A stretch of DNA of 64,000 nucleotides from Rebecca billardiae RCC1528 (Eukaryota > Protista > Haptophyta). Each line of letters begins with the position of its first letter. Position 1 is the first letter of the stretch. Below, one piece after another: positions 21,327-48,952 of the stretch. The position numbers and the translations under genes are program-made. The DNA lies in the NCBI GenBank assembly GCA_965240325.2, contig OZ251231.1:2356001-2420000 (forward strand). Direction: 5' to 3'. The notes beneath the pieces were generated by a model that saw nothing but the letters and a program-made list of their open reading frames with translations, searched no databases and was not told the DNA's origin.

Positions 21327-23165
21327 TCAGCTGCTCGGGGGCGCCAGCGTGTACGAGCCCAGCCCCAGCTCCGAGCCGCTGCTGCTCGGCGTCGGCCCCT
21401 CTGTGCGAATGGGCGGCAGGCCACCCGGCCGCGCCGGGTGCGCGCCCGGCCCCGCCGAGCCCTGGGCGGACGCGGCGCAGGCGGAGTCGATATTGGAGAC
21501 GAGCAGCGGCTCCGTGGCAGGCGCGCGCGTGAGCGCCTCGGCGGACAGGTGCGGCATCAGCGCGGGCGCGGAGGGATGCGCCAGGTTCGGCACGGCCAAC
21601 GTCCGCCCCGTCCCACGGTGGACGGCGCGCCACTCTGCGCGCCAACGGATGCAGCCGTCGATGCACGCGAGGACGGCCAGGAGCGCGGCGACGGCGGCGG
21701 CGGTGTACGCGAGCAGCCGGAAGTGGCGCAGCGCGTCGACGGTCACCCCGCGCACGGTGAGCTGCACCACCGCCTGCGTGAGCGAGATCGCCAGCTGGCA
21801 CGCCACGAGCGCCGAGAGGAAGTGGCGGCAGCCGGCGGCATCAAGCAGCACGGCTATCTGCGCGACGCTCGCCGTGCGCGTGAACTCGAAGAGCGCCTGG
21901 CAGAGGGTGAAGAGGACGTACGCGCTGGGCAGCCGCGGGAGCACGTCGGGCACGTGCGCCGCCTCGCCGAGCGCGCCGAGCAGCACCGCGCCGAGCGCGC
22001 TCGCCGCCGTGCTCACCAGCGGCGCGTGGTGCAGCACCCGCCCCTCCACAGCCGGGTGCGCCGCGAGCGCGCACGCGAGCGAGCCGAGCACGTACGAGCC
22101 GCCGAGGACGAGGCCGTTCCAGCGAGAGGAGGGGTCGTCGGCGGCGCGCGGCGCGTGCGGCCGCGCCGGCTCGTCCAGCTCGGACACCACCGCGAACAGC
22201 GCCTGGTAGTACGTGAGCATCAGCTGCTGCGTCGCCGCCAGCACCACATACCACAGCAGGAGGCACGCGAGCCGCAGGTCGCGCTGCGAGCGCGCCGTGT
22301 GCCACAGGTCGGCGATCGCGCGGCGGACGCCGAGGGTGCCGTGCGCGGGCCACGAGCGCGGCGTGTTGTCCAGCACCGCGCGAGGCATGTCCAGGCGCGG
22401 CATCCCCGCCGCGCCGCTCGGCGCGCTCGACTGCGGGTCGGCGCCCGCCGCGCCGCCGTGCGAGGCGTCGCCGCCCGCAGAGAGGCGGCGCCGGCCCCAG
22501 GCGAGGTACTCTCCGCAGCGGCCGGTGTCGAGCCGCCTGGCTGGGAGGAGGAGCGACACGCAGAAGCCGGCGCTGTGGCACCCGAGCGTGATGTACGCGA
22601 GCACGCGCAGCCGCACGTCGCACGCCACGAGCAGCTGGCCGCCCACGGCTGATGCGGCCGAGCCGACGAGCACGCACATGCGCACGACAGAGATGGCGCG
22701 CTGGTACTCGGACGGGGGGAGCACCTCGAAGAGGAGCGCGGGGAGCACCGTGGTCTTCGCCACGAAGAAGAAGGCGAAGCACACCTGGTCCACCTGCATC
22801 ATCAGCACGTCGCCACGCGGCACGAGCACAATGATGGCCGCCGCGGCGAGCCGCGCGAGCGCGCCGAGCACCACCGTCCGCTTATGGCCGAGCAGGTCCG
22901 AGCACGCGAGCGCGGCCGGGAGGCAGGCGAAGGTGCCGTACGTCCACACGGGCAGCACCGAGCCGACGAGCTCCGCCGGCGTGAACCCCTTCGAGCGCTC
23001 CAAGAACTCGAACAGGTACGCCTCCGAGGGCGAGAAGAAGGAAAGGAGCGGGTACGCTGCGAGGGCGAACCAGTGGCGGCGGCGGAGGAGGATGCTGGGC
23101 TGGCGCAGAGGCAGCAGCAGCGGCGTCGCGTACGGTGTCGTCGCCGGCGAGCATGAGGCCAGCAT
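21327..23165 (-). CDS. SLC19 (reduced folate/thiamine carrier) family transporter
   Basis: SPSEAYLFEFL..KGFT..VLPVWTY, WNG motif, about 12 TM segments. Confidence 0.82.
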   Translation of the reverse strand: MLASCSPATTPYATPLLLPLRQPSILLRRRHWFALAAYPLLSFFSPSEAYLFEFLERSKGFTPAELVGSVLPVWTYGTFACLPAALACSDLLGHKRTVVLGALARLAAAAIIVLVPRGDVLMMQVDQVCFAFFFVAKTTVLPALLFEVLPPSEYQRAISVVRMCVLVGSAASAVGGQLLVACDVRLRVLAYITLGCHSAGFCVSLLLPARRLDTGRCGEYLAWGRRRLSAGGDASHGGAAGADPQSSAPSGAAGMPRLDMPRAVLDNTPRSWPAHGTLGVRRAIADLWHTARSQRDLRLACLLLWYVVLAATQQLMLTYYQALFAVVSELDEPARPHAPRAADDPSSRWNGLVLGGSYVLGSLACALAAHPAVEGRVLHHAPLVSTAASALGAVLLGALGEAAHVPDVLPRLPSAYVLFTLCQALFEFTRTASVAQIAVLLDAAGCRHFLSALVACQLAISLTQAVVQLTVRGVTVDALRHFRLLAYTAAAVAALLAVLACIDGCIRWRAEWRAVHRGTGRTLAVPNLAHPSAPALMPHLSAEALTRAPATEPLLVSNIDSACAASAQGSAGPGAHPARPGGLPPIRTEGPTPSSSGSELGLGSYTLAPPSS

Positions 23166-23345
23166 GGTCCGCGACCGCCGCCGCGACGGGCGCCCGGTCG
23201 GAGAAGCGTACGATCGGTCTCGTCACGTTGCTCAGGCCCGTCCTTGGTGCAGCGCCCGCCGCCGGCCGGGGCGGGGGGGAGAGAGCGGCAAAGCGTCGTC
23301 GGCAGGGTGGCTGCTCGAGCATGCCCGCTCGCGGGTCGAGTGTCA

Positions 23346-25669: not shown

Positions 25670-28600
25670 TCACGAGTTGATAGCCCCGCCCACGTGGTCG
25701 GCGGCCTTGGCCCACACGTGCCAGTTGGCGTGCGAGCGGAAGGCCGGCATGCCGCTCGCGGTGTGCACGCCCACTTCCACCAGGCTGCTGAAGCGGAGTG
25801 CAAGCTGCACCTGCTCGACCGTCGCGCCGAGCGCGCGCATGCGGTTGAAGCCGACGACAATGTGCGCGGGCACCCAGCCGTGCGCGTCCATCAGCCCGCG
25901 CAGGAAGCAGTCCCTGCCCAGGTTGGCGTCGCTGAAGTAGTACTCGACCTGCTGGATGATGAGCCCAGTGCGCAGCTGCTCGGCGTGCGCGCCGAGACCA
26001 GGCGGGTAGGGCGTGAGCTCGGCCTCAGGGACGCAGCACGGCGCAGCGCCGAACGCGCGCGCATCCGGCACCGGCTCTGGCATCGCCGCTGTGTCGCAGG
26101 GCGAGAGGCTGGGCGGCGGGCTGGAGCCCTCGGCCCAGTGCTCGGCTTGCGGCAGCATCGCCGTCGGCACAGGCAGCGCGAACGGAGTCGACTGGACGAG
26201 GGGCGACGCGGGTGGCGAATGCCAGCAGGCCGCGGGCACAACGCCATTCGGCTCGGTCGGCACGTCGTGCGCAGCAGCCGATGGACCGCGCGGCTGCGAG
26301 CTCGCTGGCGGCGGCGAGAGGCAGGTGGCGTCGAAGGCGGGTGTCGGCGTGGCCGCGCGCGGGGCCATGGCACCAAACTGCAGCCGGCGCGGCACGTTCC
26401 GCCCCAGCGGCGCCATGTCAGGTGTCCACCGACGAGTCGGCAGCTTGGGCTGCAGCTTGGGCGCGGCCTGCTCCGGCGTGCCCTCCGCCTGCGGCAGCTC
26501 CTGCCACTGCTGCTGCGGCTGCGGCTGCGACGGCTGTAGCTGCTGCTGCTGCGGCTGCGCGCGCCGCGGCGCCATCTGGCGCGCGTGGGGCGGAGAGGGA
26601 AACGAGCGACCGTCCTCAGCCGCGGCCTCCCACGCCTGCTCGGCTTCTGGGCTTGGGTGACTCGGCGACCGAGGCCCGGCGTGACGCGACGACGCCTCGA
26701 GCGACTCGGCAGAGGCCGCGCCTGATGCGCCCGCCGCGCTGCTGGCGATTCCAGGCCCGGCCTCGGGCTCGGCGGCTGGGCGAGCGAGCGTGCGACGAGA
26801 GCCCAGCGCAGCGGCGTACAGGGCAGCGTCGGCGGCGGCCACGCGCTCGGCCGCCTCCTGCCGCTCGCGCTCCTCGCGCTCGGCGCGCCAGGCCTCGTGC
26901 TGCGCGCGCGCGCGCTCCGCCTCCGCAGCCGCGCGCTCTGCTTGGGCGGCCTCCTCCGCGTGCGCGCGCGCGACTCGCTGCTTCCACCGCCTGCGCGAGG
27001 CTGCGGTCGGCTTGCGCCGCGCGCCGCTCGGTGGGTGGGGCGGCGGCGTCGGCGCCGCCTCGCGCTCGAGCGCATCCTCGTCAATCTGCGCGTCACGCAC
27101 GCGCATGGCATGCAGCACTCGCTGCATCGTCTCCAGCAGCTGAAGGGTCTCGGCCGCGCACACTCGTGCCGCGCGCATCGCGTACGCGGTCGCCATGGTG
27201 TGCAGCGGCTCGAGGGCCTCGGCGGGCGGCGCAAGCTCGCGCATCAGCGAGCCCGGCTCGCGGTGCATCGTATCGAGCAACCTCAGCGCTGTCATGCCCT
27301 GGCGCATGCACGATCGGTGCACGTAGGTGAACGCGCTGCGCGACGAGTCCGGGCGCGGGTGCGAGTGAGCGTGCTCGTGCCTCGCCGCCTTCTCCATCGA
27401 GCGCGCCCAGCGCACGAGCTGGTCCACGCCGCCGCGCACGCGGTCAAAGGCCTGGTCGGAGGCGAGGGCCATCAGCTTGACGACGCGGGCGCCCTCGCTC
27501 GGGCCCTCGGGCGTGCTCGCTGCCTCCTCCTCGAAGAAGAAGCGCGGCGAGTCGGTGAAGAGGTGTGCGAGCACGTTCATGTACTGCACCGCCGCCTCCT
27601 CGTCGAGACACCCCTCAGCTGACACCGGCACCTCCACCGTCCACTCGCGCTCGGAGGCGCCGCCGCCCCGGACGGGACGCGCGGACGCCGGGCCCGGGCT
27701 CGAGCTCGCGCCCGCGGGAGGCGCGACAGCGTCGGCGTCTGATGTGGCGTGCTGCTCGGCGCACTCGCTCGCGCCGCCGTCGAGGCGGAGCGCGCCGGCG
27801 GGCGCGAACGGGGCGAGCATGTCGACCAGCGTGTGCAGGTACTTGTCCGCCCCTAGCAGGAGGTTGTTCAGCAGTTGGCGGAGCCTCTGGCCCTCCTTCC
27901 ACGCGCCCAGGCCTCCCACGAGAGGCGTGCACAGATTGTTGGCGACCTGCGACGCGAGGCCCGTGACGAGCTTCGACTCGAGATCCAAGTCGGGCGTGGC
28001 GCCAAAGGACTCGCGCGCCGACCACGCGCACGAGTGCACCAGCAGCTGGCGCAGCAGCGGCAGCAAGCGCGCCGCGCTCAGCCCGCCGCCCGCGCGCACG
28101 CCCGCACCATGCGCGTCGCCGCTCGCGCGCTCCGCCTCGGCGGCGGGCGGCTGCAGCGGCTGCCTCTGGCTCGCCGGCAGCTCCTCGCACAGGGAGGCCG
28201 GCAGCATGATCTTGAGCAGCGCGAGCAGCCCCACCAGGGCAGTGCCGCGCTCGACGAGGCCCTCGTACGACTCGACGGCTGTCGCGCTCAGCAGCAGCGC
28301 GTGCTCGTAGTCGCGCGCCTCGAGGCACGCGCGCACCAGCTGCGTGACGTGGGGCGGCGAGAGCTCCACGTCGCGCACGAGCGCGTAGAGGCTGCGCATC
28401 ATAGGGCGCGCAACCGCCGCGCACGTCGTCCGCATCGACTCGGTCGCCTGGCGGGCGAGGGCGATCTGGGCTGAGGCGGCGTCCGTGCTCCACCGCTCGG
28501 TGCCGGCATACTCGCGCCCGACACCGCCCGCCATCCAGTCGAACTCCACGCTGCGACGCACGTAGCGCACCGCCTGCGCGATCGCGCGGAGCAGCAGCTG

Positions 28601-30280
28601 CATGCAGCTGCACCTGGCCCCCGGGGTCGTGCTGATCAGCAGCTCCGCCTTGCCCTGGGTCTCCTCCCGCCACCCGACCAGCGCCGCGATCCGCCGCTCG
28701 ACAATGTCGCGGACGATGTCGAGGAGGGGGCGCGTCTTGGCGCACATGCGCCGCGCAGCGTCCGCGTCCGCCCTCAGGATCTGAAAGAGAGGCGGCAAGA
28801 CTTCCGAGACCAGCAGCGGGACGAGCACGTGCGCCGGCTGCCGGTTCAGCGCCATCGCCCAGAGGGGCACGAGCTGACCGAAGAGCGCAGGAACGACGTC
28901 CGGCTTGTTGCCGAGGCACAGCCCGTCCTTGCCGTCAATGCATTCACCGAGCAGCACCTGGAGGTGCAGCCGGGCCGAGGTCGACGCGCGCAGCGGCTCC
29001 TCGAGCGAGCGCTGCTTCGCCAGCGCCTGCGCGAGATCAAGGAGCAAGCTCGACGCCGGGCTGGACGCGTACCCGCTCGCCCATGCGGCGTCTAGCATGG
29101 TGCTCGGCGTGCACAGCATGCCGACCAGGGCGCGCACGTCGTGCACGCGCTGCGCGAGGCTGGCTTGGCCGCCGAGCTCGGCGAGCTCACACGGAAGGAG
29201 GCCAAATCGCTCATCCGCCATCGGAAAGGTGAGCTCGGCGCTCGCGAGGCCCAGGTCGCGCACCAGGTCAGACGCCGGCGCGATCATCGCGCAGATTGGG
29301 CTCCACTCCCAAAGACGGCTCAGCGCGTTCACCAGGAGCTCCTCGGCCTCCGCCTCGTCGTCGACCGCGGCGCACGAGAGCAAGCCGCGCTTGACGCCAA
29401 TGTTGTGTCGCAGCCCGCTAGCGAGCCGCTCCTTCTCCTCGCGTAGCGTCGCGCGCGTATGACCCGTCCTGCTCGGCGCGCCACGCGCGCGGTGCGCCCA
29501 CGTGCGAGCGGCGGCGGTGAGGTGGCAGCAGGCAGCGTGCGCATGCGCGGGCGCGGAACGCGCGCTCAAGATCAAGATGGCGGGGAGGGCGCAGGGCGCG
29601 CTGAAGCGCTCACCACTGCGCGGCCTCCACCTCTTGCTCGTCCAGCTCGGCGATCTTGAGGTTGAACGTCTCGCGGACCCGCCCCACGCGCCCCTGCCGG
29701 AATGCCTGGTTGCCGTTGCGCCGCTGAAGCGCGCAGAGGTGTGCGGGCGCGGCGCGGGCGCCTCGATCAGCTGGCGGCACGAGTGCCAGCGGGCGCACGG
29801 CGGGCTCGTAGGGCTGCGTACCTCCTGCCGCTCCTCCCTATTGATCAGCTTGGTGCGCTCCGCCTGGTACTTCTTCTTGCGCGACTGCTCGCGCTGGTCG
29901 TATTCGCCGAGCTCGTCATCGATCTTCTTGATCCGCTCGATCTGGGAGGCCGTGGCCACGCCGATGGCGTGATTCGCGCGCTGCACCTCTGCGTCCAGGT
30001 CTTCTGACACGTCGCCGGGCAGCGACAGCACGTCGACGCAGCACGGCGACCCTCGATGTGCTCGCCAGCCGGCGTCGCGGCAGGCGGCGCACTTGCGGAT
30101 GGTTTTCTTGGAGCAGTGCCCCTGCTCGAAGAGGCCAGCGAAGACGTTGCCCGCGGCCAGTGGCATCAGGAAGGCACCGCTACACACGGCACAGAACGCG
30201 ATGCGCTCGCGATACCCGCTTTTCGCCGTGCAGGTCGCGCAGTCGCAGCACTCGTCAACATCGTCGTCCTCGCTCGACAT
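25670..30280 (-). CDS. Large protein with N-terminal Cys-rich region, helical core and C-terminal La motif (introns 29724..29821, 29469..29613)
   Basis: IIQQVEYYFSDANLGRDCFLRGLMDAHGWVPAHIVVGFNRMRAL is a La HTH motif; two GT-AG introns restore a continuous coiled coil. Confidence 0.78.
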   Translation of the reverse strand: MSSEDDDVDECCDCATCTAKSGYRERIAFCAVCSGAFLMPLAAGNVFAGLFEQGHCSKKTIRKCAACRDAGWRAHRGSPCCVDVLSLPGDVSEDLDAEVQRANHAIGVATASQIERIKKIDDELGEYDQREQSRKKKYQAERTKLINREERQEVRSPTSPPCARWHSCRQLIEAPAPRPHTSARFSGATATRHSGRGAWGGSARRSTSRSPSWTSKRWRPRSGERFSAPCALPAILILSARSAPAHAHAACCHLTAAARTWAHRARGAPSRTGHTRATLREEKERLASGLRHNIGVKRGLLSCAAVDDEAEAEELLVNALSRLWEWSPICAMIAPASDLVRDLGLASAELTFPMADERFGLLPCELAELGGQASLAQRVHDVRALVGMLCTPSTMLDAAWASGYASSPASSLLLDLAQALAKQRSLEEPLRASTSARLHLQVLLGECIDGKDGLCLGNKPDVVPALFGQLVPLWAMALNRQPAHVLVPLLVSEVLPPLFQILRADADAARRMCAKTRPLLDIVRDIVERRIAALVGWREETQGKAELLISTTPGARCSCMQLLLRAIAQAVRYVRRSVEFDWMAGGVGREYAGTERWSTDAASAQIALARQATESMRTTCAAVARPMMRSLYALVRDVELSPPHVTQLVRACLEARDYEHALLLSATAVESYEGLVERGTALVGLLALLKIMLPASLCEELPASQRQPLQPPAAEAERASGDAHGAGVRAGGGLSAARLLPLLRQLLVHSCAWSARESFGATPDLDLESKLVTGLASQVANNLCTPLVGGLGAWKEGQRLRQLLNNLLLGADKYLHTLVDMLAPFAPAGALRLDGGASECAEQHATSDADAVAPPAGASSSPGPASARPVRGGGASEREWTVEVPVSAEGCLDEEAAVQYMNVLAHLFTDSPRFFFEEEAASTPEGPSEGARVVKLMALASDQAFDRVRGGVDQLVRWARSMEKAARHEHAHSHPRPDSSRSAFTYVHRSCMRQGMTALRLLDTMHREPGSLMRELAPPAEALEPLHTMATAYAMRAARVCAAETLQLLETMQRVLHAMRVRDAQIDEDALEREAAPTPPPHPPSGARRKPTAASRRRWKQRVARAHAEEAAQAERAAAEAERARAQHEAWRAEREERERQEAAERVAAADAALYAAALGSRRTLARPAAEPEAGPGIASSAAGASGAASAESLEASSRHAGPRSPSHPSPEAEQAWEAAAEDGRSFPSPPHARQMAPRRAQPQQQQLQPSQPQPQQQWQELPQAEGTPEQAAPKLQPKLPTRRWTPDMAPLGRNVPRRLQFGAMAPRAATPTPAFDATCLSPPPASSQPRGPSAAAHDVPTEPNGVVPAACWHSPPASPLVQSTPFALPVPTAMLPQAEHWAEGSSPPPSLSPCDTAAMPEPVPDARAFGAAPCCVPEAELTPYPPGLGAHAEQLRTGLIIQQVEYYFSDANLGRDCFLRGLMDAHGWVPAHIVVGFNRMRALGATVEQVQLALRFSSLVEVGVHTASGMPAFRSHANWHVWAKAADHVGGAINS

Positions 30281-30463
30281 GATTGACAGCCAACGGTCGT
30301 CGGCTCGTCGCGGAGGCGAAGACCTTTAAGACTCTGCGCACTGGTCTGCACATTCAAGTTTAGGACGAACAAGCCGGACTCCATCATACAGCTCCGGAGC
30401 CAGCACTGGTGAGCAGGCTTGGTCAGGACTTCAAGGACTGTCTTACGGCTTACTGTACCGCGA

Positions 30464-38213: not shown

Positions 38214-39875
38214 CTACGCGGGCATGCCTGGCACGGCGAGCCGCGCCACGACGCGCACCGCAAGACGCACGGCGCACGCGAGCGTGGCCGCTCCGAGCGC
38301 ACCGAGCAGCGCGAGCGCGCGCGTCGTCACGTCCGCGCGCCGAACGATCTCCGAGTAGGCGAGGCCGGGGGACTGCACGAGGTAGAAGATCTGCGGGTGG
38401 AAGCCAAGCCGCGCCCCGAGCGTGCGTGACAGCTGCAGCCGGACGAAGAAGTTGAGCGCCCAGAACGCGCGCCGCACCGCCCCGAACGCCGCCTGCTGCG
38501 AGTATTGGAACGGGTAGCCGAGGGTCATCATGCGGCACAGCGCGGTGGCCTCGCGCGCGCGCGCGGCGCCGTACTGCGCGAGCGCGGGCACGAGGCTGGG
38601 GCCGCTCTGCGCGGGAAAGTGCACGTCCGCGGCATCGAGCCACTCCGCCAGCGCGCCCACATCCTGCAGCCCGGAGTTGACGCCCTGACCCAGATCGGGC
38701 GGGAAGGCATGCAGTGCGTCGCCCGCGAGCGCCGCGCACGCGCCGCCGGCCACGGTCAAGGCGGCGTGCGTGCACCGCGTGGGCGCGGGGAAGCGCCCGC
38801 CGCGGCTCGCCGCGAAGCGCGCGAGCTCCTCCTCGCCCAGGTGCTTCGCGTCGAGCGGCACGTGCGGGAACACGCGGCGGAGGTACGCCCCCATCTCGGC
38901 CGCGCTCAGCTGCTCCCAGAGCGGGTGGCCGTGGCGCGCCGTGATGAAGTTGGCTGTGCGGCCGTTTGCGTCCGAGCGCAGCGGCAGCATGCCCACGCGC
39001 AGCGAGGGCTCGGCGCCCGGCGTGGAGCGCAGCGAGTAGGCCACCTGCGCCTCCGCGCGCGCCTCGGGCACGCGGCGCGAGAGCTGGAACGACGGCGGAA
39101 GCGTGAGCACCTTGTACCGGAGACCGGCCGCGGCGGAGCGGTGCGTTCGCACGCCAAACGCGCGCCCGTTGCTCAGCTCGGCGAGGCGCGCGCGCACGAC
39201 GGAGCGCAGGCCGTCGGCGCCGAGGACGAGCTGCGCGGTGAGGCGCTGCTCCTCTCCAGTCGCCGCCTCGCGCGCGCCCACGCTCCACGTCGTCGCGTTC
39301 TGCAGGTGCAGGCTGGAGAGCTCGTGTCCGTACAGACGCTCGATGGCAGGCAGCTCGCCGCCCGCGCCGCGCGTGGCCGCGACTGCGTCGTCGAGCAGGC
39401 GGACGAAGGTGTTGCGCGGCACCCACTGCGGCGTGATCTGCCCCCGGGCATTCTTGTTCACGATCGGAAGCCCGACCGGCTCCCCCACGCCCCCGTCCGG
39501 CTCATCTGTCACCTGCGCGATGCGGAATGCAGCCTGCGAGACGCTCGCCGCCTCGAGGGCGGGCATCAGCCCGAGCGGCTCGAGCACGGCCTGCCCGCGC
39601 CCGTCTATGAGGTACAGGAACCCGCGCTCCGGATCGTACGCCGCCGGGTCGCTCGCCTTCTCGACGAGCGCGACGCGCGCGCCGCGCGCGCGCAGCGCGA
39701 GCGCGGCGGCGAGCCCCGTCGGGCCCGCGCCGACGATGACGGCGTCGAACGGGCGCGCAGGCGCGGTGGCAACGATGGCCGCGCGCGAAGCTCTAGCGCG
39801 CGCCATCATTGGGCGCGCACCCGGCCGAGCTACGCCGGCCGCCATCGCGACGATGCACGCTGATGTCCACAGCAT
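38214..39875 (-). CDS. FAD-dependent monooxygenase, kynurenine 3-monooxygenase-like, possibly plastid-targeted
   Basis: IVGAGPTG, LGADGLRS, GDALHAFPPDLGQGVNSGLQD; signal/transit-like N-terminus; C-terminal TM. Confidence 0.88.
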   Translation of the reverse strand: MLWTSACIVAMAAGVARPGARPMMARARASRAAIVATAPARPFDAVIVGAGPTGLAAALALRARGARVALVEKASDPAAYDPERGFLYLIDGRGQAVLEPLGLMPALEAASVSQAAFRIAQVTDEPDGGVGEPVGLPIVNKNARGQITPQWVPRNTFVRLLDDAVAATRGAGGELPAIERLYGHELSSLHLQNATTWSVGAREAATGEEQRLTAQLVLGADGLRSVVRARLAELSNGRAFGVRTHRSAAAGLRYKVLTLPPSFQLSRRVPEARAEAQVAYSLRSTPGAEPSLRVGMLPLRSDANGRTANFITARHGHPLWEQLSAAEMGAYLRRVFPHVPLDAKHLGEEELARFAASRGGRFPAPTRCTHAALTVAGGACAALAGDALHAFPPDLGQGVNSGLQDVGALAEWLDAADVHFPAQSGPSLVPALAQYGAARAREATALCRMMTLGYPFQYSQQAAFGAVRRAFWALNFFVRLQLSRTLGARLGFHPQIFYLVQSPGLAYSEIVRRADVTTRALALLGALGAATLACAVRLAVRVVARLAVPGMPA

Positions 39876-40037
39876 GATTGCCGGCGAGACGTGGCCTTGA
39901 CACCCGCGCCGCCGTCACGATGTCGCCGATCGGGCGCCGATTCGGGGCATCGGGGCTCGGCAGCAGCCGAAATCGAAGCAGGCAGCAGCGCCCGCGCGCC
40001 CGCGTGGGTGCTGCGCGGGTCTGAACTTGCCGCAAAC

Positions 40038-41166
40038 CAAGGGCGGTAAGGGCTGTCAACTCCCAGTGGCGCCGAGTGGCGGAGGTTGGGGGCCCCTCAA
40101 CTCGTGCGGCCGCGCGGCGCAGCGGCGAAGTCTCCTGGGGCGCCGCCCTGGAGGGCGCGTGGGGTGCGCACGCCGCGTGCTCCTGCGCCCGCGGCAGCGG
40201 CCGCGGACACGGCGCGCGTGGTTGGTCGCATGCTAGACAGCATGTAGTACCCTCCCACGCCGCGCGCCGCGCTCGCCGGTGCCCTTGCCGTGCCTCAGGC
40301 CAGCCGCGCACGCGCGCCGCACCAATGGCCAGCCGTGGCCACGCGCCAGCCGCCGGCGCGCGCGCGGTGCGCGGTGCGGTCGGCGCGGGTCGGGCGCGCG
40401 CCCGGGGCGAGGCTCACGTGTGGTGGGCGCGCGCCATGCCGCCTCGCGCCGCCGCACACGAGCTTGATCACGTTCCACGCGGCTGCTGAAGGGTGCTCGT
40501 CGAGCATTCCTCGGCCATCAGAAATGAGCTTGGACAAGCGGCTGTGAGCGCATCAGTGCGAGGAACGCGAGCACTTGGGGGCTCGCGTGCCTTATTAGGA
40601 GGCTGGTCGTGCACATATCAGTGGTCTGCGCTTGTCTATCACGCGTCGCTGCCTTCCCATGATCGTCTCAACATGAGCATTTTCAAACATGGCAATGCAC
40701 ACTCGACAGCATGATAACGCGTGCGCGCCGACCCATGCGGGCGCCAGCGCGGCGGCGCGAGGCGGCATGGCGCGCGCCCACCACACGTGAGCCTCGCCCC
40801 GGGCGCGCGCCCGACCCGCGCCGACCGCACCGCGCACCGCGCGCGCGCCGGCGGCCGGCGCGTGGCCACGGCTGGCCATTGGTGCGGCGCGCGTGCGCGG
40901 CTGGCCTGAGGCGCGGCGAGGGCACCGGCGAGCGCGGCGCGCGGCGTGGGAGGGTACTACATGCTGTCTAGCATGCGACCAACCACGCGCGCCGTGTCCG
41001 CGGCCGCTGCCGCGGGCGCAGGAGCACGCGGCGTGCGCACCCCACGCGCCCTCCAGGGCGGCGCCCCAGGAGACTTAGCCGCTGCGCCGCGAGGCCGCAC
41101 GAGTTGAGGGGCCCCCAACCTCCGCCACTCGGCGCCACTGGGAGTTGACAGCCCTTACCGCCCTTG
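40038..41166. mobile_element. Non-autonomous foldback DNA transposon FB-1 (~418-bp TIRs, 7-bp TSD CGCAAAC)
   Basis: 40038..40455 is the near-perfect reverse complement of 40749..41166; termini CAAGGG/CCCTTG; CGCAAAC at 40031-40037 and 41167-41173. Confidence 0.88.
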
Positions 41167-41173
41167 CGCAAAC

Positions 41174-42292
41174 CAAGGGGAGTCAGGGTACAGCACGTCC
41201 AGTTGGGCTGCAGCTGGAGCTTGGGTCCAAAAGCTTCCCGCGGCGCAGCGGCACTCGCCGCCGCCGCCGCCGTCGAGGGGCGGTTGTGGCGCGCACGGCG
41301 TGAGCCGCTGCGGGCGCTGAGGTGCGCGCGACGGCGGCGCGCCCGGCGGCGCTGCTGTAGGAGGCCACTGCCCTCCTCTCTGCCCCGCGCGCTTCGCTCG
41401 TCGTCGCCGTCTCCGCGCCTGCGACTCAGCGCGCACGCGAGCGCGGCACCGCCCGGCAGCCGGGGCAATCTCTGCCGTGACTGCGCATGTGCGTCGCGAC
41501 CTGGTCGGCCCAGCGCGCGAGGCGCGTGCGGGCGAGGTAGGGCCAGTATGGGCGCGCGCCATGCCGCCTCGACCTTGCGCCGGTGGGCATGTCGCGGGCC
41601 TTGCACCTCTGTCGACAACGTTGACAAACAATGCGGCACCCAAGCGCAGGCGTCAGTGTGCACGATCGAGGCAGTAGGCGTACAGACGCGATAGTTGCAG
41701 AGCCTTTTGTGATCATGCGAGTCATACATTGTCAGTGACTCTCACCCAGGTCGTCTGCGCGCTGAACTGACGTTTTGACTGAGTGCCTCGAGATCGCCTC
41801 GACGATGGCCCGTGCATTGCTTGAACACAGTCCACTGAGCGGCCAACCAGACACACGTGCTCAGTTCCCTGTTGTACGCTCTGATGGGCTTACTTGAGGC
41901 GGCATGGCGCGCGCCCATACTGGCCCTACCTCGCCCGCACGCGCCTCGCGCGCTGGGCCGACCAGGTCGCGACGCACATGCGCAGTCACGGCAGAGATTG
42001 CCCCGGCTGCCGGGCGGTGCCGCGCTCGCGTGCGCGCTGAGTCGCAGGCGCGGAGACGGCGACGACGAGCGAAGCGCGCGGGGCAGAGAGGAGGGCAGTG
42101 GCCTCCTACAGCAGCGCCGCCGGGCGCGCCGCCGTCGCGCGCACCTCAGCGCCCGCAGCGGCTCACGCCGTGCGCGCCACAACCGCCCCTCGACGGCGGC
42201 GGCGGCGGCGAGTGCCGCTGCGCCGCGGGAAGCTTTTGGACCCAAGCTCCAGCTGCAGCCCAACTGGACGTGCTGTACCCTGACTCCCCTTG
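41174..42292. mobile_element. Non-autonomous foldback DNA transposon FB-2 (397-bp TIRs)
   Basis: 41174..41570 is the reverse complement of 41896..42292; termini CAAGGG/CCCTTG; no matching TSD on the right. Confidence 0.85.
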
Positions 42293-42494
42293 TCCTACCT
42301 GTGTCGTTAAATCATAGAATGTGTCCAGCGCCCAACCGGCCTCAGCGCGTTCCCGGACACGGCAGGTTGTTTCGGGAGCAGGGCGGCAAGCAGAGCTCTC
42401 GGTGACAACCCGCGGTGGACGACAAGGCCTGTGGCGGTCTGCCCGACCGAGTGCCCCGCCGCGAAGCCCTCCGCGCGGGCGTTCGGGCGGCGAC

Positions 42495-45400
42495 ATGACG
42501 GACTACGCGGCCCCACCATCAACGGGTGCCGGTGTCCACGCGCGCGCTCCGCCGCTGGGGGCCACTGGCCGCGAGCCATCGGCCGCCGCGGTCGTCGCGG
42601 ACGATCACCACACAGGCCGGCCCGAGATGTACGAGACGCAGTGCCCGTTCTGCTTCGAGGCGGTGCATTTCTCGTTGATGCGCGACTCGAACAACCTGAT
42701 GTGCCCGAGCTGTGCAATGCTCTTCGACGCCACCCACGCGTACGCGAAGGCCGAGATCGTTGCCGCGCTTTCGATACAGAAGCACGCGCGCGGGCGCTTT
42801 GCTCGGATGATGATGCGCCACAAGCAGGAGCCCGCCCACGCGGCTGAGCCGGCGAAGGGCAGCTGCCCGGCATGCTCGGAGAGCGTGCACTTTACGCACG
42901 ACCGCGAGACCGACAGCCTCGTGTGCCCGAGCTGCGCGACGATCTTCCACGCGGAGCGGCGCGACAAGCTGATGGCCGACTGCCCGGCGTGCTCGGCGGG
43001 CGTGCACTACTCGCTCGATCGGCGCTCGCACAGCCTCGTGTGCTCGAGCTGCGCGACGGCCTTCCAGCCGCCGGCGCAGCCGGGCGAGCCAAAGCCGCCG
43101 CCGCGCGAGGAGCCGACGCCGATGCGCGCGGGCACCGTGTTTGAGCGAGGCAAGCTGTACCACGCGCCGTGCCCGGTGTGCTCGCTGTCGGTCTCGTTCC
43201 GGCTGCACCAGCGGCTGGACACGATCGCGTGCCCCAACTGCTCGATCGTCTTCCACGGTGCGATCGCGCTCAAGGCGGTGGCGATGGACGTGCTCGCGGT
43301 CTTGACAATCCAGAAGCACGCGCGCGGCCGGCTCACGCGCCGCGCGGTCGCGAGGCAAAAGACGGGCGGCTCGCTCAAGATCTCGGCCGAGCTGGGGCAG
43401 GCGGTGCAGCCGGGCGAGACGAGCGCGCACACGCCTCCGCAGCACGCGCACGGCAAGGGCGCCGCGGTCGAGAAGAAGGACGCGCACCCGCCCACCGCGC
43501 GCAAGCGGCTGTCGCGGCCACCGCGAGGCTCGCTGTACCAGATGAGCTGCCCGACGTGCGAGGCAGATGTGCACTTCTCGCCCTACTACGACACGCACAA
43601 CCTGCTCTGCCCGACGTGCATGACGATCTTCGACGCGCGGAAGGAGCACCGCTGGGCCGAGGTGATCTCCGCCATCCGCATCCAGAAGGAGGTGCGGCGC
43701 AGGCAGGCGATGCGGCTGCGTGACGAGATGCGCCGCCAGCTCTCTGCGCGGCGCGCTGCCGGAGCGCGCCCCGAGATGTACGTGACCGACTGCCCGAGCT
43801 GCTTCAAGGGCGTGCACTTTGCGCTGCTGCGCGACACGAACAACCTGCTGTGCGGCCACTGCTCGACGATGTTCGACGCGACGACCGCGTACCGGCAGGC
43901 CGACGTCATCGCCGCCATCCGGATTCAGCAGCGGCTGCGGAGCAAGATGGCGATGCGCCTCAAGGCACGGCTGCTCGGGCGCCGCCTCGCAGACGCGCCG
44001 CCGCCCGACGCGGAGGCGCCGCCGCCCATCAACGTCGCGGCGGCAACGGCGGCGGTGAGCGGCCCGCGCGCGGCGAGCCCGCTCTCGCCCACGTCGCCCG
44101 GAGCCCGCCCCGAGATGTACGTGACCGACTGCCCGAGCTGCTTCAAGGGCGTGCACTTTGAGCTGCTGCGCGACACGAACAACCTGCTGTGCGGCCACTG
44201 CTCGACGCTGTTCGACGCGACGAGCGCGTACAAGCAGGCCGAGGTGCTCGCCGCGATCCACGTGCAGAAGCACGCGCGCGGCCGGCTCGAGCGGCGCAAG
44301 AGCACGCTGGTGCGCGGCTTCCTCCACCGCGGCAAGCTGTACCACGCGCCGTGCCCGGTGTGCTCGACCTCGGTCTCGTTCCGGCTGCACCAGAGAGGGG
44401 ACGCCATCGTGTGCCCCAACTGCGCGATGGTGTACCACGCGGGGCGCGCGCTCAAGACGGTGGCGATCGACGCGCTCGCCGTGGTGACGATCCAGAAGTA
44501 CACGCGCGGCCGGCTCGAGCGCAAGCGCACGCTGCAGCGCCGCGCGAGCAAGCCGTCGGCCTTGCTGCCGGCCGCGCCGCCGGCCGCCGCGCCGCCGCTG
44601 CCCGGCCCGGCAGCGCCCGAGCCGGCGCACGCGTCGAGCCCGCCCTCGCCCTCGCCGCCGGTCTCGCGTCCCGACATGTACGTGACCGACTGCCCGACCT
44701 GCTTCAAGGGCGTGCACTTCTCGCTGCTGCGCGACACGAACAACCTGCTCTGCCCGGAGTGCTCGACGATGTTCGACGCGACGAGCGCGTACAAGCAGGC
44801 CGAGGTGCTCGCCGCGATCCACGTGCAGAAGCACGCGCGCGGCCGGCTCGAGCGGCGCAAGCACAAGCTGGCCAAGGAGTTCCTGCAGCGGGGCAAGCGG
44901 TACCACGTGCCGTGCCCGGTGTGCGGCAGCGCGCTCTCCTTCAAGACGCACCGCGAGAGCCACGACGTGGTGCTCTGCCCGCACTGCTGCAGCGTCTTCA
45001 GCGGCAGCCACGCGCTCAAGTCGGTCTCCGTCGTCGTGCTCGCGGCCATGCACATCCAGCGGCACGCGCGCGGCCGGCTCGAGCGCGCGCGGCACGGCGA
45101 TCGCAGGAGAGCGAGCATCCGCGCGCGCGCCGCCAGCCTGGCCGGCCCACGCCCGGCGAGCCCGCTCTCGCCCACGTCGGCGGGCTCGCGCCCCGAGATG
45201 TACGTGACCGACTGCCCGAGCTGCTTCAAGGGCGTGCACTTTGAGCTGCTGCGCGACACGAACAACCTGCTGTGCGGCCACTGCTCGACACTGTTCGACG
45301 CGACGAGCGCGTACAAGCAGGCCGAGGTGCTCGCCGCGATCCACGTGCAGAAGCACGCGCGCGGCCGGCTCGAGCGGCGCAAGAGCACGCTGGTGCGCGG

Positions 45401-47473
45401 CTTCCTCCACCGCGGCAAGCTATACCACGCGCCGTGCCCGGTGTGCTCGACCTCGGTCTCGTTCCGGCTGCACCAGAGAGGGGACGCCATCGTGTGCCCC
45501 AACTGCGCGATGGTGTTCCACGCGGGGCGCGCGCTCAAGACGGTGGCGATGGACGCGCTCGCCGTGGTGACGATCCAGAAGCACACGCGCGGCCGGCTCG
45601 AGCGCAAGCGAGCCGAGGCGCGGCGCGCGCGCAAGGCGTCGCAGGTGCTGCAGCCGATGGCGGAGGTGCCCGAGGAGCGGGAGGCGGAGCCGCTGCCGCC
45701 GCCGCCGCCGCCGCCGCTCCCGGAGCTGATCGACACGCGCTGCCCGCACTGCTCGTGGGCGGGCACGTTCGAGCGGCCCAAGGGCGTGTCGCAGCTCTGG
45801 TGCAAGAACTGCAACAGCCCGTTCATGGAGCGGGAGGTGCAGCTGCAGCACGACGCGGCGCTGCTGATCCAACGGCACGCGCGCGGCAAGCTCACGCGCG
45901 ACCGCGGCCTCCTCTCGCCCGTCGCCAAGCTGATCAAGCGGCTGACCACGCCGGAGGTCGGGGGGCTCAACCGCACGCGCTGCCCGGCGTGCGAGACCGT
46001 CGTCACCTTCCGCCCCGAGTCGGGCGACGTGACGGTGTGCCCGAGCTGCTCGCACATGTTCTCGGGGCACGAGGCGATGCGCAAGGCGGCGGAGAAGGCG
46101 GTGCTCGACATCCAGCGCATCATCCGCGGCCGGATCATCCGCACGATGCTCAAGCGGCTCAAGCGCTCGATGCGGCCGAGCCAGCTCGTGCGCGCGAGCT
46201 CCAAGCTCAACGGCGCGCCGCCCAAGCCCGCGCCGCCCGCCGCGCCCGCGCCCGCCGCCGAGCCGCCGCCCGGCCCGCGCCGACAGCAGCGGCCGGCATC
46301 CGCCGCGCCCCGGCCGGGCCTCGCGCCGCAGCAGCGGCCGGTCTACGAGCGCGTGCCGCCGCCGCAGCCGCCTGGCGCGGGGCTCGCCCACCGCGGCCCG
46401 TCGCTGCACAGCGGCATCCTGTCGCCCGCGCCCGCGCCCGCCGCTCGCCCGGCGCCGTCCAGCCCCGAGGGCCACTCCCCGGTGCCCGGGCCTCCGGCGG
46501 GCGGCTCGGCGCACTCGCAGGTGGAGGACGACTACGGCGTGACGCGCGTCAACATGGCGCGCCCCTCGTCGGCGCGCGCCGCCGGCCGCGCGCAGCCGGC
46601 GCGCGCGGCGGGGCCGAGCGTGCGCCCAGGCCGCATCGTGCCCGCGCGAGAGCCGCAGCGCCCGCCGCCCCAGTACGACGAGGGCGGGGAGGATCTGGCC
46701 AACAGCTTCCCACCGCGCAGGCGCACGCGCGCCGCGTCCGGCGGCCGGCGGCGCCGCGCCAGTCCCAACGGGGGTGCGCGCGCACGCGCACGCGCACGCG
46801 CAGCGCCCGCGCGCTCGCGCAGCGCCCGTCGCTCCGCGCTCGCAGCGCGTGCGGCTGAGCACCTCACACGCCCGCGCGCCGCGAACGCTCCCCCCTGCGC
46901 GCCGCGCGCCGCGCAGCCACGTTCCCCAACGGCCACACGGCTGTACTCGGCCGGACGACCGTCTCGGTCGAGGAGCTGCGCGGCACGGGCGGCACGCGCG
47001 TGACCCCGCGCCCGGGGCCGCGCACGAACCGGCCGCCCTCGCCGCGCGGCAACGAGCGCCTCGAGCTGATCGCGCAGATCTACGGCATCGCCTACTCGCG
47101 TGGCAAGCAGAACAAGATCCAGCTCGAGAGGACGCCGCTGCCCAAGCAGTACCCGTGCGCGCGCCCGCCGCCGCGCGAGCTGAGCACACGGCGCTGCGCG
47201 ACCGCGCGGCCACCCACCGCACACCGCACCCGCGCGGCACTCGCGTGTTCGGATGCTCACGTCCCGCTGCCCCCGCCGCCGCGCACGCGACGTTTGCCAA
47301 CTCGCTCGCATCGCAGGGTGCGCCTGCCGCCACCGGGGCCGCCCACGACGCTGGGCCAGTCGCTGCCGCCACATTACACGGCGAATAATGGCGGTGGGGT
47401 CGGTTCCAGCAGCTCGCCGCCTGGATCAGGATCGCCGACGGATGCGCCGACGCGACGGTACGCGTGGAATTGA
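42495..47473 (+). CDS. Tandem C4 zinc-ribbon / IQ-motif repeat protein (introns 46774..46916, 47155..47316)
   Basis: 14 CxxC-x16/17-CxxC units, 12 followed by [IV]QxxxR[GRS]xxxR; Pro-rich linkers; GTGCGCG donors lead to a C-terminal exon ERLELIAQIYGIAY. Confidence 0.85.
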
Positions 47474-47662: not shown

Positions 47663-48952
47663 ATGGCGGCGGCCACGACAAAAGATTCTTATTCCACGGC
47701 GGCAACGCCGCGTGTGCTCCGGCGATCGTCGAGTTTCTTCCGACGCGAGCTCTCCGGGTCGTACTCGTTCGCCATCGTTGTGACCCTCGCTCTGTGTGTC
47801 GCTGTGCTCGACCCCGTCAAGTGCCTGTGGGGCGGCATACAAGTCGTCCGTTCGCTGTGCCCGGCTCGATTTGCGCACAACTTGCCAAGCATGCTCGCGA
47901 CAACAGAGCAGTGGTGCTGGCAGATGTGGAGGGCGCGCTCGGCATCCGCCGCGAGCATCGCGCCACGGCCGATCCTCGAGCTCACGCCGGACGAGTTCGA
48001 CGCCATGCGCACAGTGCCGACAGACCGACCTTTTGTGGTGTGCTGCGCGCATGAGACACGCACACAAGCAGTGGCAGCCCGTGCCACGCGTCCCATGAGC
48101 GTACCGTGCGCGTGCTTGCGAGCGGCGCGCGTCGCGCCGCGCCCGGCTCGCGTGACGCGCCCGCCCCCTGCGCGTCCACTCGCCCCGACGCCACCGCCCG
48201 GCGCCTGACAGGTGCGCGGGTACCTCAATCGGACGCGGCTGCGCGCCACGTGGACGGCGGAGTGGCTCTCTGAGTCGCCCGGCCGCGGGGACATGCCCGT
48301 CGACTTCTTCACTGACGCGCGTGAGGCGATCATCACGCCAGACGCGCGCGCGCCGCTGCGCGAGGTCGTCGCGAATATCACGGCCGGAGGCGCGCAGAAG
48401 CTGGCGACAGAGATGGTCTTCCGGGCGGAGCCGGCCGCGGTGGGCGCGCTCGCCGAGCTCAGCCTGGGGGCCAAGCTGGGCCGGCAGTACTTCACGCCCG
48501 CCATGCTCGGCACGATTCTGACCATGCCGCTGTTCATGGCCCGGGGCGACGAGCGACGAGCGCCGCGCACGGACATGCACTGCGAGCCGATCGCCAACGC
48601 CGTGCTCATGCTCGAGGGCTCCAAGCGCTGGACGCTGCTGGCGCCCGAGCACTCACACCTCGTCTCTCCGCAGGTGAGCCCCGATGGGCGCGCCTACTTC
48701 TACGCGCGCATACCGGCCGGAGACCCGGCGTTCGGCCGGCTGCCGCGGCACGAGGTGCGCACGTATGGCGGGGACGTGCTGTTCGTGCCCACGTGGACGT
48801 GGCACCGCGTGGACTATGACGATGGCGTGCTCGCGATCGCCGTCTCACTCTTCCACTTCCGCCCATTCGACTTTGGCTTCAACCACCCCACATATGCGGC
48901 GCTCCTCGTGCCAAATCTGGTCAAGGAGCTGTTCGGCCTGAAGAAGCAGTAG
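47663..48952 (+). CDS. JmjC/cupin-8 Fe(II)-2OG oxygenase (intron 48038..48211)
   Basis: N-terminal TM; PFV|VRG after splicing; TDMHCEP, GSKRWTL, GDVLFVPTWTWHRV. Confidence 0.85.

What the first reader, a model, noticed from the sequence alone, without database searches (positions are those of the whole stretch)
42495..47473. Giant protein built of alternating C4 zinc ribbons and calmodulin-binding IQ motifs
Seen: 14 CxxC...CxxC units. Twelve are followed at near-fixed spacing by an IQ motif such as IQKHARGRLERR. Two module types recur: A (YVTDCPSCFKGVHFxLLRDTNNLLC) and B (YHAPCPVCSxSVSFRLHQRxDxIxCPNC), in the order A,x,x,B,A,A,A,B,A,B,A,B,y,y, with Pro-rich linkers. Known: IQ motifs bind calmodulin/centrin-like EF-hand proteins, and short C4 ribbons (LSD1-like) mediate protein binding and are redox-sensitive. 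I do not recognise a family whose repeat unit is a zinc ribbon plus an IQ motif. Inference: a Ca2+/Zn(redox)-responsive scaffold or filament, possibly in a Ca2+-driven organelle (haptonema or flagellum) if this is a haptophyte.
Basis: partly seen in the sequence, partly recalled or inferred. Interest (0 to 1): 0.85.

Follow-up and report, generated by a model that had tools for sequence, protein, structure and literature searches.

The report
Zinc-ribbon plus IQ-motif repeat protein
A high-GC alga, probably a pavlovophyte haptophyte, has a real gene for a long protein made of 14 small zinc-binding knots, 12 of them each followed by a calmodulin-docking helix; only four other sequences in the databases searched carry this repeat unit, and its cellular role is untested.

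Summary
Window 42495-47003 (+) is one open frame with third-position GC of 0.956. It holds 14 CxxC-x15-17-CxxC zinc ribbons. Twelve are followed 18-22 residues later by an IQ motif, ten of them the complete form IQxxxRGxxxR.

AlphaFold2 folds one module confidently (pLDDT 92.9) as a four-stranded zinc ribbon running into a 27-residue helix that carries the IQ.

An exhaustive profile search of 1.84 billion representative proteins found the fused ribbon+IQ unit in three other sequences. A word-index search added a fourth, the only named one (Pavlovales sp. CCMP2436). All other hits match one half only. No Pfam family, solved structure or paper found describes this architecture.

The gene has a 143-nt intron (46774-46916) at a position shared with the CCMP2436 orthologue. 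A short conserved C-terminal exon follows.

The most likely function is a multivalent, bead-and-rod scaffold that docks up to 12 calmodulin-family EF-hand proteins. This is inferred, not shown. The haptonema/flagellum idea has no support. No RNA-seq run was listed, so transcription is unverified. The scan has not noted this unit on other DNA.

The parts
42495..46773 (+). Exon 1 of the gene (first in-frame ATG to the proposed splice donor), about 1426 codons
   Evidence: ORF 42321-47003. The first ATG is at 42495. GC3 is 0.956 inside the frame against 0.64 just upstream. GC3 in this frame falls after about 46740.
42642..42806 (+). Module 1 (type A): zinc ribbon 42642-42713 plus IQ 42774-42806
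42864..42935 (+). Module 2 (x): zinc ribbon without an IQ
42981..43052 (+). Module 3 (x): zinc ribbon without an IQ, followed by a Pro-rich linker
43170..43340 (+). Module 4 (type B): ribbon 43170-43241 plus IQ 43308-43340
43548..43712 (+). Module 5 (A-like): ribbon plus degenerate IQ (IQKEVRRRQAMR, no Gly)
43791..43955 (+). Module 6 (A): ribbon plus degenerate IQ (IQQRLRSKMAMR)
44130..44522 (+). Dyad 1: module 7 (A, IQ 44262-44294) joined by one continuous helix to module 8 (B, ribbon 44352-44423, IQ 44490-44522)
   Evidence: AF2 gives ribbon, helix 37-72, ribbon, helix 110-142.
44691..45086 (+). Dyad 2: module 9 (A, IQ 44823-44855) plus module 10 (B, ribbon 44913-44987, IQ 45054-45086)
45213..45605 (+). 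Dyad 3: module 11 (A, IQ 45345-45377) plus module 12 (B, IQ 45573-45605). A near-identical recent copy of dyad 1, offset 1083 nt.
   Evidence: 6 nucleotide differences between aa 538-678 and aa 899-1039; 97% identity for repeat family D1.
45741..45899 (+). Module 13 (y): ribbon plus IQ. Counterpart of the CCMP2436 module at P0002 residues 611-663.
45981..46142 (+). Module 14 (y): ribbon plus IQ. Counterpart of the P0001 module at residues 733-787.
   Evidence: 61% identity over P0001 residues 713-809
46158..46724 (+). Basic, Pro/Ala-rich, probably disordered tail with three short motifs conserved in the orthologues: LKRSMRPSQLVRA (46158-46196), GVTRVNMARPSSAR (46536-46577) and FPPRRR (46707-46724)
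   Evidence: The Atlas model of the P0002 tail has pLDDT 0.49.
46774..46916 (+). Proposed 143-nt intron (GTGCGC...GCGCAG, phase 1). It contains a (CGCGCA)n microsatellite and the frame-2 stop.
   Evidence: The frame shifts from 3 to 2 between conserved blocks. GC3 switches frame. The CCMP2436 orthologue has an intron at the same place, L001 about 12840-12963, GTGCGG...CAGCAG. A donor at 46762 is also in phase, so the exact donor is not fixed.
46917..47155 (+). Conserved part of exon 2, ending in the motif ERLELIAQIYGIAY...LPKQY
   Evidence: 54% identity to the C-terminus of P0002. The same exon lies in L002 at 3281-3400. GC3 is 0.95-1.0.
47156..47473 (+). Uncertain C-terminal extension of about 105 codons up to the stop at 47471-47473
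   Evidence: The orthologues stop 2-6 codons after LP[KR][YF]. Where L002 has TGA the window has TGC. GC3 falls to 0.65-0.85. This is either stop loss into a former 3' UTR or a sequence error. Unresolved.

Best explanation
This is a real, lineage-restricted protein-coding gene of two exons: 42495-46773 and 46917 to about 47155 or 47473. Its product is a string of composite modules. Each module is a four-cysteine zinc ribbon of about 30 residues that leads straight into an alpha-helix of 27-36 residues carrying a canonical IQ motif.

The layout has three parts:
- Twelve ribbon+IQ modules and two bare ribbons, separated by Pro/Ala/Ser-rich flexible linkers.
- Three A-B dyads, in which the helix of A runs directly into the ribbon of B.
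- A basic, disordered tail with four short conserved motifs.

The most likely mechanism is as follows. The ribbons are structural zinc sites that nucleate and cap each helix. Each IQ helix docks one calmodulin-family EF-hand protein (calmodulin or a calmodulin-like light chain). The protein would then be a multivalent bead-and-rod scaffold, or reservoir, holding up to 12 such proteins.

Ten of the IQ motifs are of the complete type IQxxxRGxxxR. By established knowledge of IQ motifs in myosin V, neuromodulin and PEP-19, that type binds Ca2+-free calmodulin. Occupancy or rigidity would therefore be expected to change when Ca2+ rises. The conserved tail motifs would anchor the scaffold to an unknown partner.

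Shown here: gene reality, module anatomy, predicted fold, and rarity. Inferred: zinc binding, calmodulin binding, stoichiometry, and Ca2+ dependence.
For: Coding:
- GC3 is 0.956 in frame.
- Orthologues P0001 (36% identity) and P0002 (34%) share the module order at the C-terminal end, the tail motifs and the intron position.

Module:
- In 22 modules from three proteins the invariant positions are C7, P8, C10, F16, C27, C30, Q52 and R56.
- G57, R61, F34 and A47 are at least 90% conserved.
- These are exactly the four zinc ligands and the defining IQxxxRGxxxR positions.

Fold:
- AF2 of one module has pLDDT 92.9, with four short strands and then helix 37-63.
- The dyad folds as ribbon, helix, ribbon, helix with pTM 0.38, so there is no fixed inter-module packing.
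- The ribbon superposes on known zinc ribbons (LysW, HOIP and HOIL-1 RING2, Rpa12, Trx2 zinc finger) at 1.3-2.3 A over 31-39 residues.

IQ:
- Pfam IQ scores 61.7 bits against a cut-off of 20.3.
- The profile's IQ half aligns with IQs of flagellar radial spoke protein 23, myosin Va (2ix7), SPATA17, FAP305 and Sp17.

Chance is excluded by shuffles.
Against: - No binding, metal or expression data exist. No RNA or DNA sequencing run was listed for this stretch.
- The IQ motifs lack the hydrophobic residue often found at position 14. Two are degenerate.
- dN/dS between paralogous and orthologous modules is 0.44-0.9 by the Nei-Gojobori method, which is not clearly purifying. The extreme GC3 bias depresses dS, so the test is uninformative.
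- Genomic neighbours give no functional hint: a folate carrier, a La-domain protein, an FAD monooxygenase and a cupin/JmjC protein.
- The protein is very basic (pI 10.3), which would also suit nucleic-acid binding.
Confidence: 0.6

Rival explanations
1. It is a basic zinc-ribbon array that binds nucleic acid or another protein. The IQ-like helices are simply basic amphipathic spacers and bind no EF-hand protein.
For: The pI is 10.3 with an Arg-rich tail. Many zinc ribbons that resemble this one in fold or sequence sit in nucleic-acid machines: Rpa12, TFIIB, eL43, eS31 and TniQ. One source auto-annotated P0003 as ribosomal protein L37AE/L43A.
Against: The near-invariant helix positions are precisely Q, R, G and R of the IQ consensus, plus Ala at -5. 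Pfam IQ is well above its cut-off. A mere spacer would not conserve these positions across three proteins. The ribbon matches no nucleic-acid-binding ribbon family above cut-off.
Confidence: 0.2
2. One reading: a Ca2+/Zn(redox)-responsive filament of a Ca2+-driven organelle such as the haptonema or flagellum.
For: Several of the IQ motifs in solved structures that align best are axonemal: radial spoke protein 23, FAP305, SPATA17 and Sp17. The organism is probably a flagellate haptophyte, since the closest named homologue is from Pavlovales.
Against: IQ similarity does not indicate location; myosin Va IQs score equally well. No homologue from any other named organism was found among 15 billion proteins. 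By general knowledge, the only named source order, Pavlovales, has a reduced haptonema. No axonemal domain is present. Nothing speaks for redox chemistry.
Confidence: 0.08
3. It is not a functional gene: a long open frame thrown up by high GC content, or a decaying repeat-expanded pseudogene.
For: High-GC DNA gives long spurious ORFs; a 963-aa antisense ORF lies in the same place. The stop codon of the orthologues is missing. Transposon-like foldback repeats lie 200 nt upstream. No transcript evidence was obtainable.
Against: GC3 is 0.956 in one frame only. There is no internal stop or frameshift over 4.3 kb. All four Cys are intact in all 14 ribbons. Orthologues exist with a conserved intron position and conserved tail motifs.
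Confidence: 0.04

Closest known systems
Multi-IQ calmodulin or light-chain docking proteins (myosin V lever arm, ASPM, plant IQD scaffolds, flagellar radial spoke protein 23, neuromodulin/PEP-19)
   Same: Repeated canonical IQ motifs (IQxxxRGxxxR) on alpha-helices. Pfam PF00612 is above its cut-off. The IQs align with those of myosin Va and radial spoke protein 23.
   Different: In those proteins the IQs follow each other every 23-25 residues on one helix, or stand alone. Here each IQ helix is individually preceded by a zinc ribbon at a fixed 18-22-residue offset, and the modules are separated by flexible linkers. There is no motor, CH, GAP or IQ67 domain.
Generic bacterial and archaeal C4 zinc ribbons (Pfam Zn_ribbon_4/5 'MJ0042-type', DUF3426 proteins, YnfU PF23499, DUF7573, Lar)
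   Same: A CPxC-x16-CxxC-xxxF pattern and a four-strand ribbon fold. Forty-two ribbon-only proteins match the ribbon half of the module profile; they are mostly bacterial-looking arrays of two or three ribbons.
   Different: None of them carries an IQ helix. Single modules stay below every ribbon family's cut-off; the best is Prok-RING_1 at 24.4 bits against 29.1, and YnfU at 20.8 against 27. The whole-protein YnfU score of 87 bits is a sum over repeats.
LSD1-type zinc finger
   Same: A short C4 unit with two CxxC knuckles. One LSD1-domain protein appears at rank 28 of the structural search.
   Different: There is no Pfam zf-LSD1 hit at E up to 1. The LSD1 consensus between the knuckles is absent.
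Sfi1-centrin filaments
   Same: The concept of a long protein lined with many EF-hand proteins. An Sfi1 cluster appears among the weak language-model neighbours at 0.64.
   Different: There is no Sfi1 Pfam hit. The repeats here are IQ motifs, not Sfi1-type repeats. By general knowledge Sfi1 repeats are Trp-containing; this protein has almost no Trp. Sfi1 has no zinc ribbons.

Membership tests
IQ calmodulin-binding motif (Pfam PF00612) | Score above Pfam's gathering cut-off | tested here: met
   61.7 bits against 20.3, with 5 stretches passing on their own. P0001 scores 49.9 and P0002 42.7.
IQ calmodulin-binding motif (Pfam PF00612) | Consensus [FILV]QxxxRGxxxR conserved | tested here: met
   Q52 and R56 are invariant, and G57 and R61 at least 90% conserved, in 22 modules. 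Ten of the window's 12 motifs are complete.
IQ calmodulin-binding motif (Pfam PF00612) | The motif lies on an exposed alpha-helix | tested here: met
   AF2 gives helix 37-63 at pLDDT of about 95 and helices 37-72 and 110-142 in the dyad. These are predictions only.
IQ calmodulin-binding motif (Pfam PF00612) | Binds calmodulin or a related EF-hand light chain | not testable with these tools
   The structure tool takes single chains of session sequences only. This needs co-folding or a pull-down.
C4 zinc ribbon (fold class) | Two CxxC knuckles, all four Cys conserved | tested here: met
   C7, C10, C27 and C30 are invariant. There are 14 of 14 intact units with 15-17-residue loops.
C4 zinc ribbon (fold class) | Beta-hairpin ribbon fold that superposes on solved zinc ribbons | tested here: met
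   Four strands are predicted. Foldseek matches LysW, HOIP RING2, Rpa12 and Trx2 at rmsd 1.3-2.3 A with probability 0.75-0.96, but E-values are 0.5-1 because the domain is so small.
C4 zinc ribbon (fold class) | Binds one Zn2+ | not testable with these tools
   Needs metal analysis of recombinant protein.
YnfU (Pfam PF23499) | A single domain scoring above the cut-off of 27 bits | tested here: not met
   The whole protein scores 87.3 bits, summed over 7 stretches. A single B module scores 20.8, and the A and y modules give no hit.
LSD1 zinc finger (Pfam zf-LSD1) | Any Pfam match | tested here: not met
   Not among the 17 families listed at E up to 1, nor in the single-module scans.
Sfi1 centrin-binding repeat (PF08457) | Any Pfam match or Sfi1-type (Trp-containing) repeat | tested here: not met
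   No hit. The protein has almost no Trp.
Myosin | A motor domain upstream of the IQs | tested here: not met
   No Myosin_head hit. The N-terminus is 49 residues long before the first ribbon.

The most novel reading that the evidence does not exclude
The zinc ribbon+IQ unit is an undescribed composite Ca2+-signalling repeat. The ribbon would contact the bound calmodulin-like protein and select a dedicated light chain. The A-B dyads would then become rigid rods only when loaded. The result would be a Ca2+-switchable, zinc-stapled cytoskeletal scaffold specific to pavlovophyte algae.
Probability: 0.2. Interest if true: 0.65.

Novelty: new variant of a known kind. Interest (0 to 1): 0.45.

Why it matters
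IQ motifs and zinc ribbons are both commonplace. A fixed fusion of the two as a repeating unit has not been described. In searches of about 15 billion predicted proteins it appears in only four other sequences.

If each module docks a calmodulin-like protein next to a zinc knot, it would be a new way to build a multivalent Ca2+-sensor scaffold. It would also be a compact 64-residue module that could be studied in isolation. It would add a lineage-specific piece to Ca2+ signalling in haptophytes, a group that is ecologically important and biochemically little explored.

If it binds nothing of the sort, it remains a minor orphan repeat protein.

Tried and rejected
- Transcript evidence: two look-ups of public sequencing runs (RNA, then any kind) listed none, so read laying could not be used.
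- dN/dS (Nei-Gojobori) between paralogous and orthologous modules gave 0.44-0.9. I rejected it as uninformative because GC3 of about 96% suppresses synonymous change.
- A metagenome-contig scan with the dyad alignment gave 520 pattern matches, none a relative.
- Two further word-index protein searches (P0003, P0002) returned only the already known members.
- Fold searches in PDB, AlphaFold DB clusters and the ESM Atlas returned only generic zinc ribbons.
- Language-model neighbours of the whole protein and of the P0002 tail gave only weak IQ-type leads.
- Literature searches for zinc ribbon plus IQ plus calmodulin, and for haptophyte variants, found no relevant paper.
- Genomic context was uninformative.
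- Assigning the organism to Diacronema lutheri was considered. The window has 68% GC against a published 73.25% (PMC8379373), and the protein is absent from the protein collection. The species is left open.
- LSD1, YnfU, Sfi1 and myosin membership were each tested and not met.
Full report
**1. The observation**

Window 42321-47003 (+) is one open frame. Its first ATG is at 42495. Translation from there gives 14 units of the form CxxC, 15-17 residues, CxxC.

Twelve units are followed by an IQ-type motif at a fixed distance from the last cysteine. The distance is 20 residues for type A, 22 for type B, and 18 and 20 for the last two modules. Ten of the twelve are the complete form [IV]QxxxRGxxxR. 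Modules 5 and 6 have degenerate versions. Modules 2 and 3 are ribbons only.

Separate half-profiles for the ribbon and for the IQ recover 14 ribbons, 12 IQs and 12 adjacent pairs. Shuffling the protein 2000 times gives on average 0.009 complete IQ motifs and 0.018 ribbons. All 57 cysteines of the coding part lie in a ribbon or next to one.

**2. Is it a gene?**

- Third-position GC is 0.956 in this frame, against 0.68 and 0.56 at positions 1 and 2. It is 0.64 just upstream of the ATG. This is a strong coding signature in a 68%-GC genome.
- The long antisense ORFs are by-products of the GC content.
- The modules occur nowhere else in the window in any of the six frames.
- There are two full-length relatives. 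P0001 is from a JGI metagenome contig (973 aa as called, 7 modules). P0002 is a hypothetical protein of Pavlovales sp. CCMP2436 (929 aa, 6 ribbons and 7 IQs).
- These relatives share the last modules and a set of tail motifs: LKRSMRPSQLVRA, GVTRVNMARPSSAR, FP(P)RRR, and a C-terminal ERxELIAQIYG...LP[KR][YF].

**3. Gene model**

The C-terminal motif lies in another frame at 47050-47150, beyond the stop of the main frame at 47003. A GC3 scan shows coding potential moving from the first frame to that frame between about 46740 and 46920.

A GT...AG intron at 46774-46916 restores the frame. It is 143 nt, reads GTGCGC...GCGCAG, and is phase 1. A donor at 46762 is also in phase.

The CCMP2436 gene model has an intron at the corresponding place. 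It lies at L001 about 12840-12963 and has a very similar donor, GTGCGG...CAGCAG. In the P0001 contig the same last exon lies beyond the called stop.

The orthologues end 2-6 codons after LP[KR][YF]. In the window, TGC stands where L002 has TGA, and the frame runs on to 47473 with falling GC3. This may be a real stop loss or a sequence error; it could not be decided. No sequencing run was listed, so transcription and splicing remain unverified.

**4. Repeat history**

The orthologues have 6-7 modules and the window has 14. Residues 538-678 and 899-1039 are two A-B dyads that differ at 6 nucleotides. Direct-repeat families with 1083-nt spacing confirm a recent duplication.

**5. The module**

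I aligned 22 modules from the three proteins (alignment A1). Eight positions are invariant: C7, P8, C10, F16, C27, C30, Q52 and R56. F34, A47, G57 and R61 are at least 90% conserved. The constraint therefore falls on the four metal ligands and on the defining residues of the IQ consensus.

AlphaFold2 with this alignment gives pLDDT 92.9. The model has four short strands followed by one helix, residues 37-63, that contains the IQ.

An A-B dyad (alignment A2) folds as ribbon, helix 37-72, ribbon, helix 110-142. Its pLDDT is 75 and pTM 0.38, so there is no confident packing between modules. The picture is beads and rods. Dyads are separated by 50-70-residue Pro/Ala/Ser-rich linkers that carry SP and TP sites.

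**6. What the two halves resemble**

The ribbon:
- It superposes on generic zinc ribbons: LysW, HOIP and HOIL-1 RING2, Rpa12 and the Trx2 zinc finger, at rmsd 1.3-2.3 A.
- It also matches bacterial Zn_ribbon_4/5 and DUF3426-type proteins.
- Single modules fall below the cut-off of every Pfam ribbon family. The whole-protein YnfU score of 87 bits is a sum over repeats.
- There is no zf-LSD1 hit.

The IQ half:
- It is a canonical IQ. Pfam gives 61.7 bits against a cut-off of 20.3.
- In the PDB profile search it aligns with the IQs of flagellar radial spoke protein 23, myosin Va (including 2ix7), SPATA17, FAP305 and Sp17.

**7. Rarity**

A profile of the whole module was run against 1.84 billion representative proteins. 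It gave 469 hits at E up to 0.001.

Among the best 150, only P0001, P0003 and P0016 match the module end to end. P0003 is a 185-aa metagenome fragment with one dyad. P0016 is a 342-aa protein from a Logan contig with a single C-terminal module.

With split profiles, 42 of the remaining hits are ribbon-only and 66 are IQ-only. Three word-index searches of 5.8 billion clusters added nothing beyond P0001 and P0002. A metagenome contig scan found nothing. No paper in the library combines these features.

The only named source is a member of the Pavlovales. The window's own species is not identified. Its GC of 68% is lower than the 73.25% published for Diacronema lutheri (PMC8379373).

**8. Mechanism**

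Shown here:
- A conserved composite module, with a zinc-ribbon fold prediction and a canonical IQ on a helix.
- Multivalency: 12 such sites.
- Flexible linkers and a disordered basic tail with conserved short motifs. The Atlas model of the P0002 tail has pLDDT 0.49.

Inferred from established knowledge of IQ motifs:
- Each IQ helix docks one calmodulin-family EF-hand protein.
- Complete IQ motifs prefer the Ca2+-free form, so loading would respond to Ca2+.

Inferred from anatomy:
- The ribbon caps and nucleates the helix.
- In dyads a bound light chain would sit between two ribbons. That could confer partner specificity and stiffness.

I put 0.6 on this reading as a whole. That breaks down as about 0.9 for a real gene encoding zinc ribbon+IQ modules and about 0.6 for calmodulin-family binding.

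Rivals:
- A nucleic-acid-binding or other-partner ribbon array whose helices are only spacers (0.2).
- A non-functional ORF (0.04).

**9. Verdict**

The LSD1, redox and organelle parts are unsupported.

This is a new domain architecture built from two very common elements. It lies in an obscure lineage and has no functional data. It is a new variant of a known kind (multi-IQ docking proteins), of moderate interest.

Noticed in passing
window 40038-41166 and 41174-42292: Two back-to-back foldback elements lie about 200 nt upstream of the gene's ATG. Their inverted arms are 418 nt (99% complementary) and 397 nt (100% complementary), with 293-nt and 325-nt loops. Another first-stage note flags them as foldback transposons.
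   Followed up: partly
window 47156-47158 compared with L002 about 3407-3409: At the position of the orthologue's TGA stop the window reads TGC. This extends the frame by about 105 codons of low GC3. It is either stop loss into the 3' UTR or a base error.
   Followed up: partly
window 46779-46828: A (CGCGCA)n microsatellite lies inside the proposed intron (Tandem Repeats Finder).
   Followed up: no
window 25673-30325 (-): A 1551-aa open frame with high GC3 has a La domain near its C-terminus (residues 1456-1511). This is an unusually long La-domain protein.
   Followed up: no
window 21330-23222 (-), 38217-39914 (-), 48209-48949 (+): The neighbouring coding frames are a reduced-folate-carrier/MFS transporter, an FAD-dependent monooxygenase-like protein and a cupin/JmjC-like protein. 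None has an evident link to the zinc ribbon+IQ gene.
   Followed up: partly
L003 130-1158 (P0016): A 342-aa protein from a Logan contig has a low-complexity N-terminal part and a single zinc ribbon+IQ module at its very C-terminus. The module therefore also occurs singly, outside the long repeat protein.
   Followed up: partly
L001 10640-10964: The first 'intron' of the CCMP2436 gene model spans a run of N (an assembly gap). That orthologue may have more modules than the 6 annotated.
   Followed up: no
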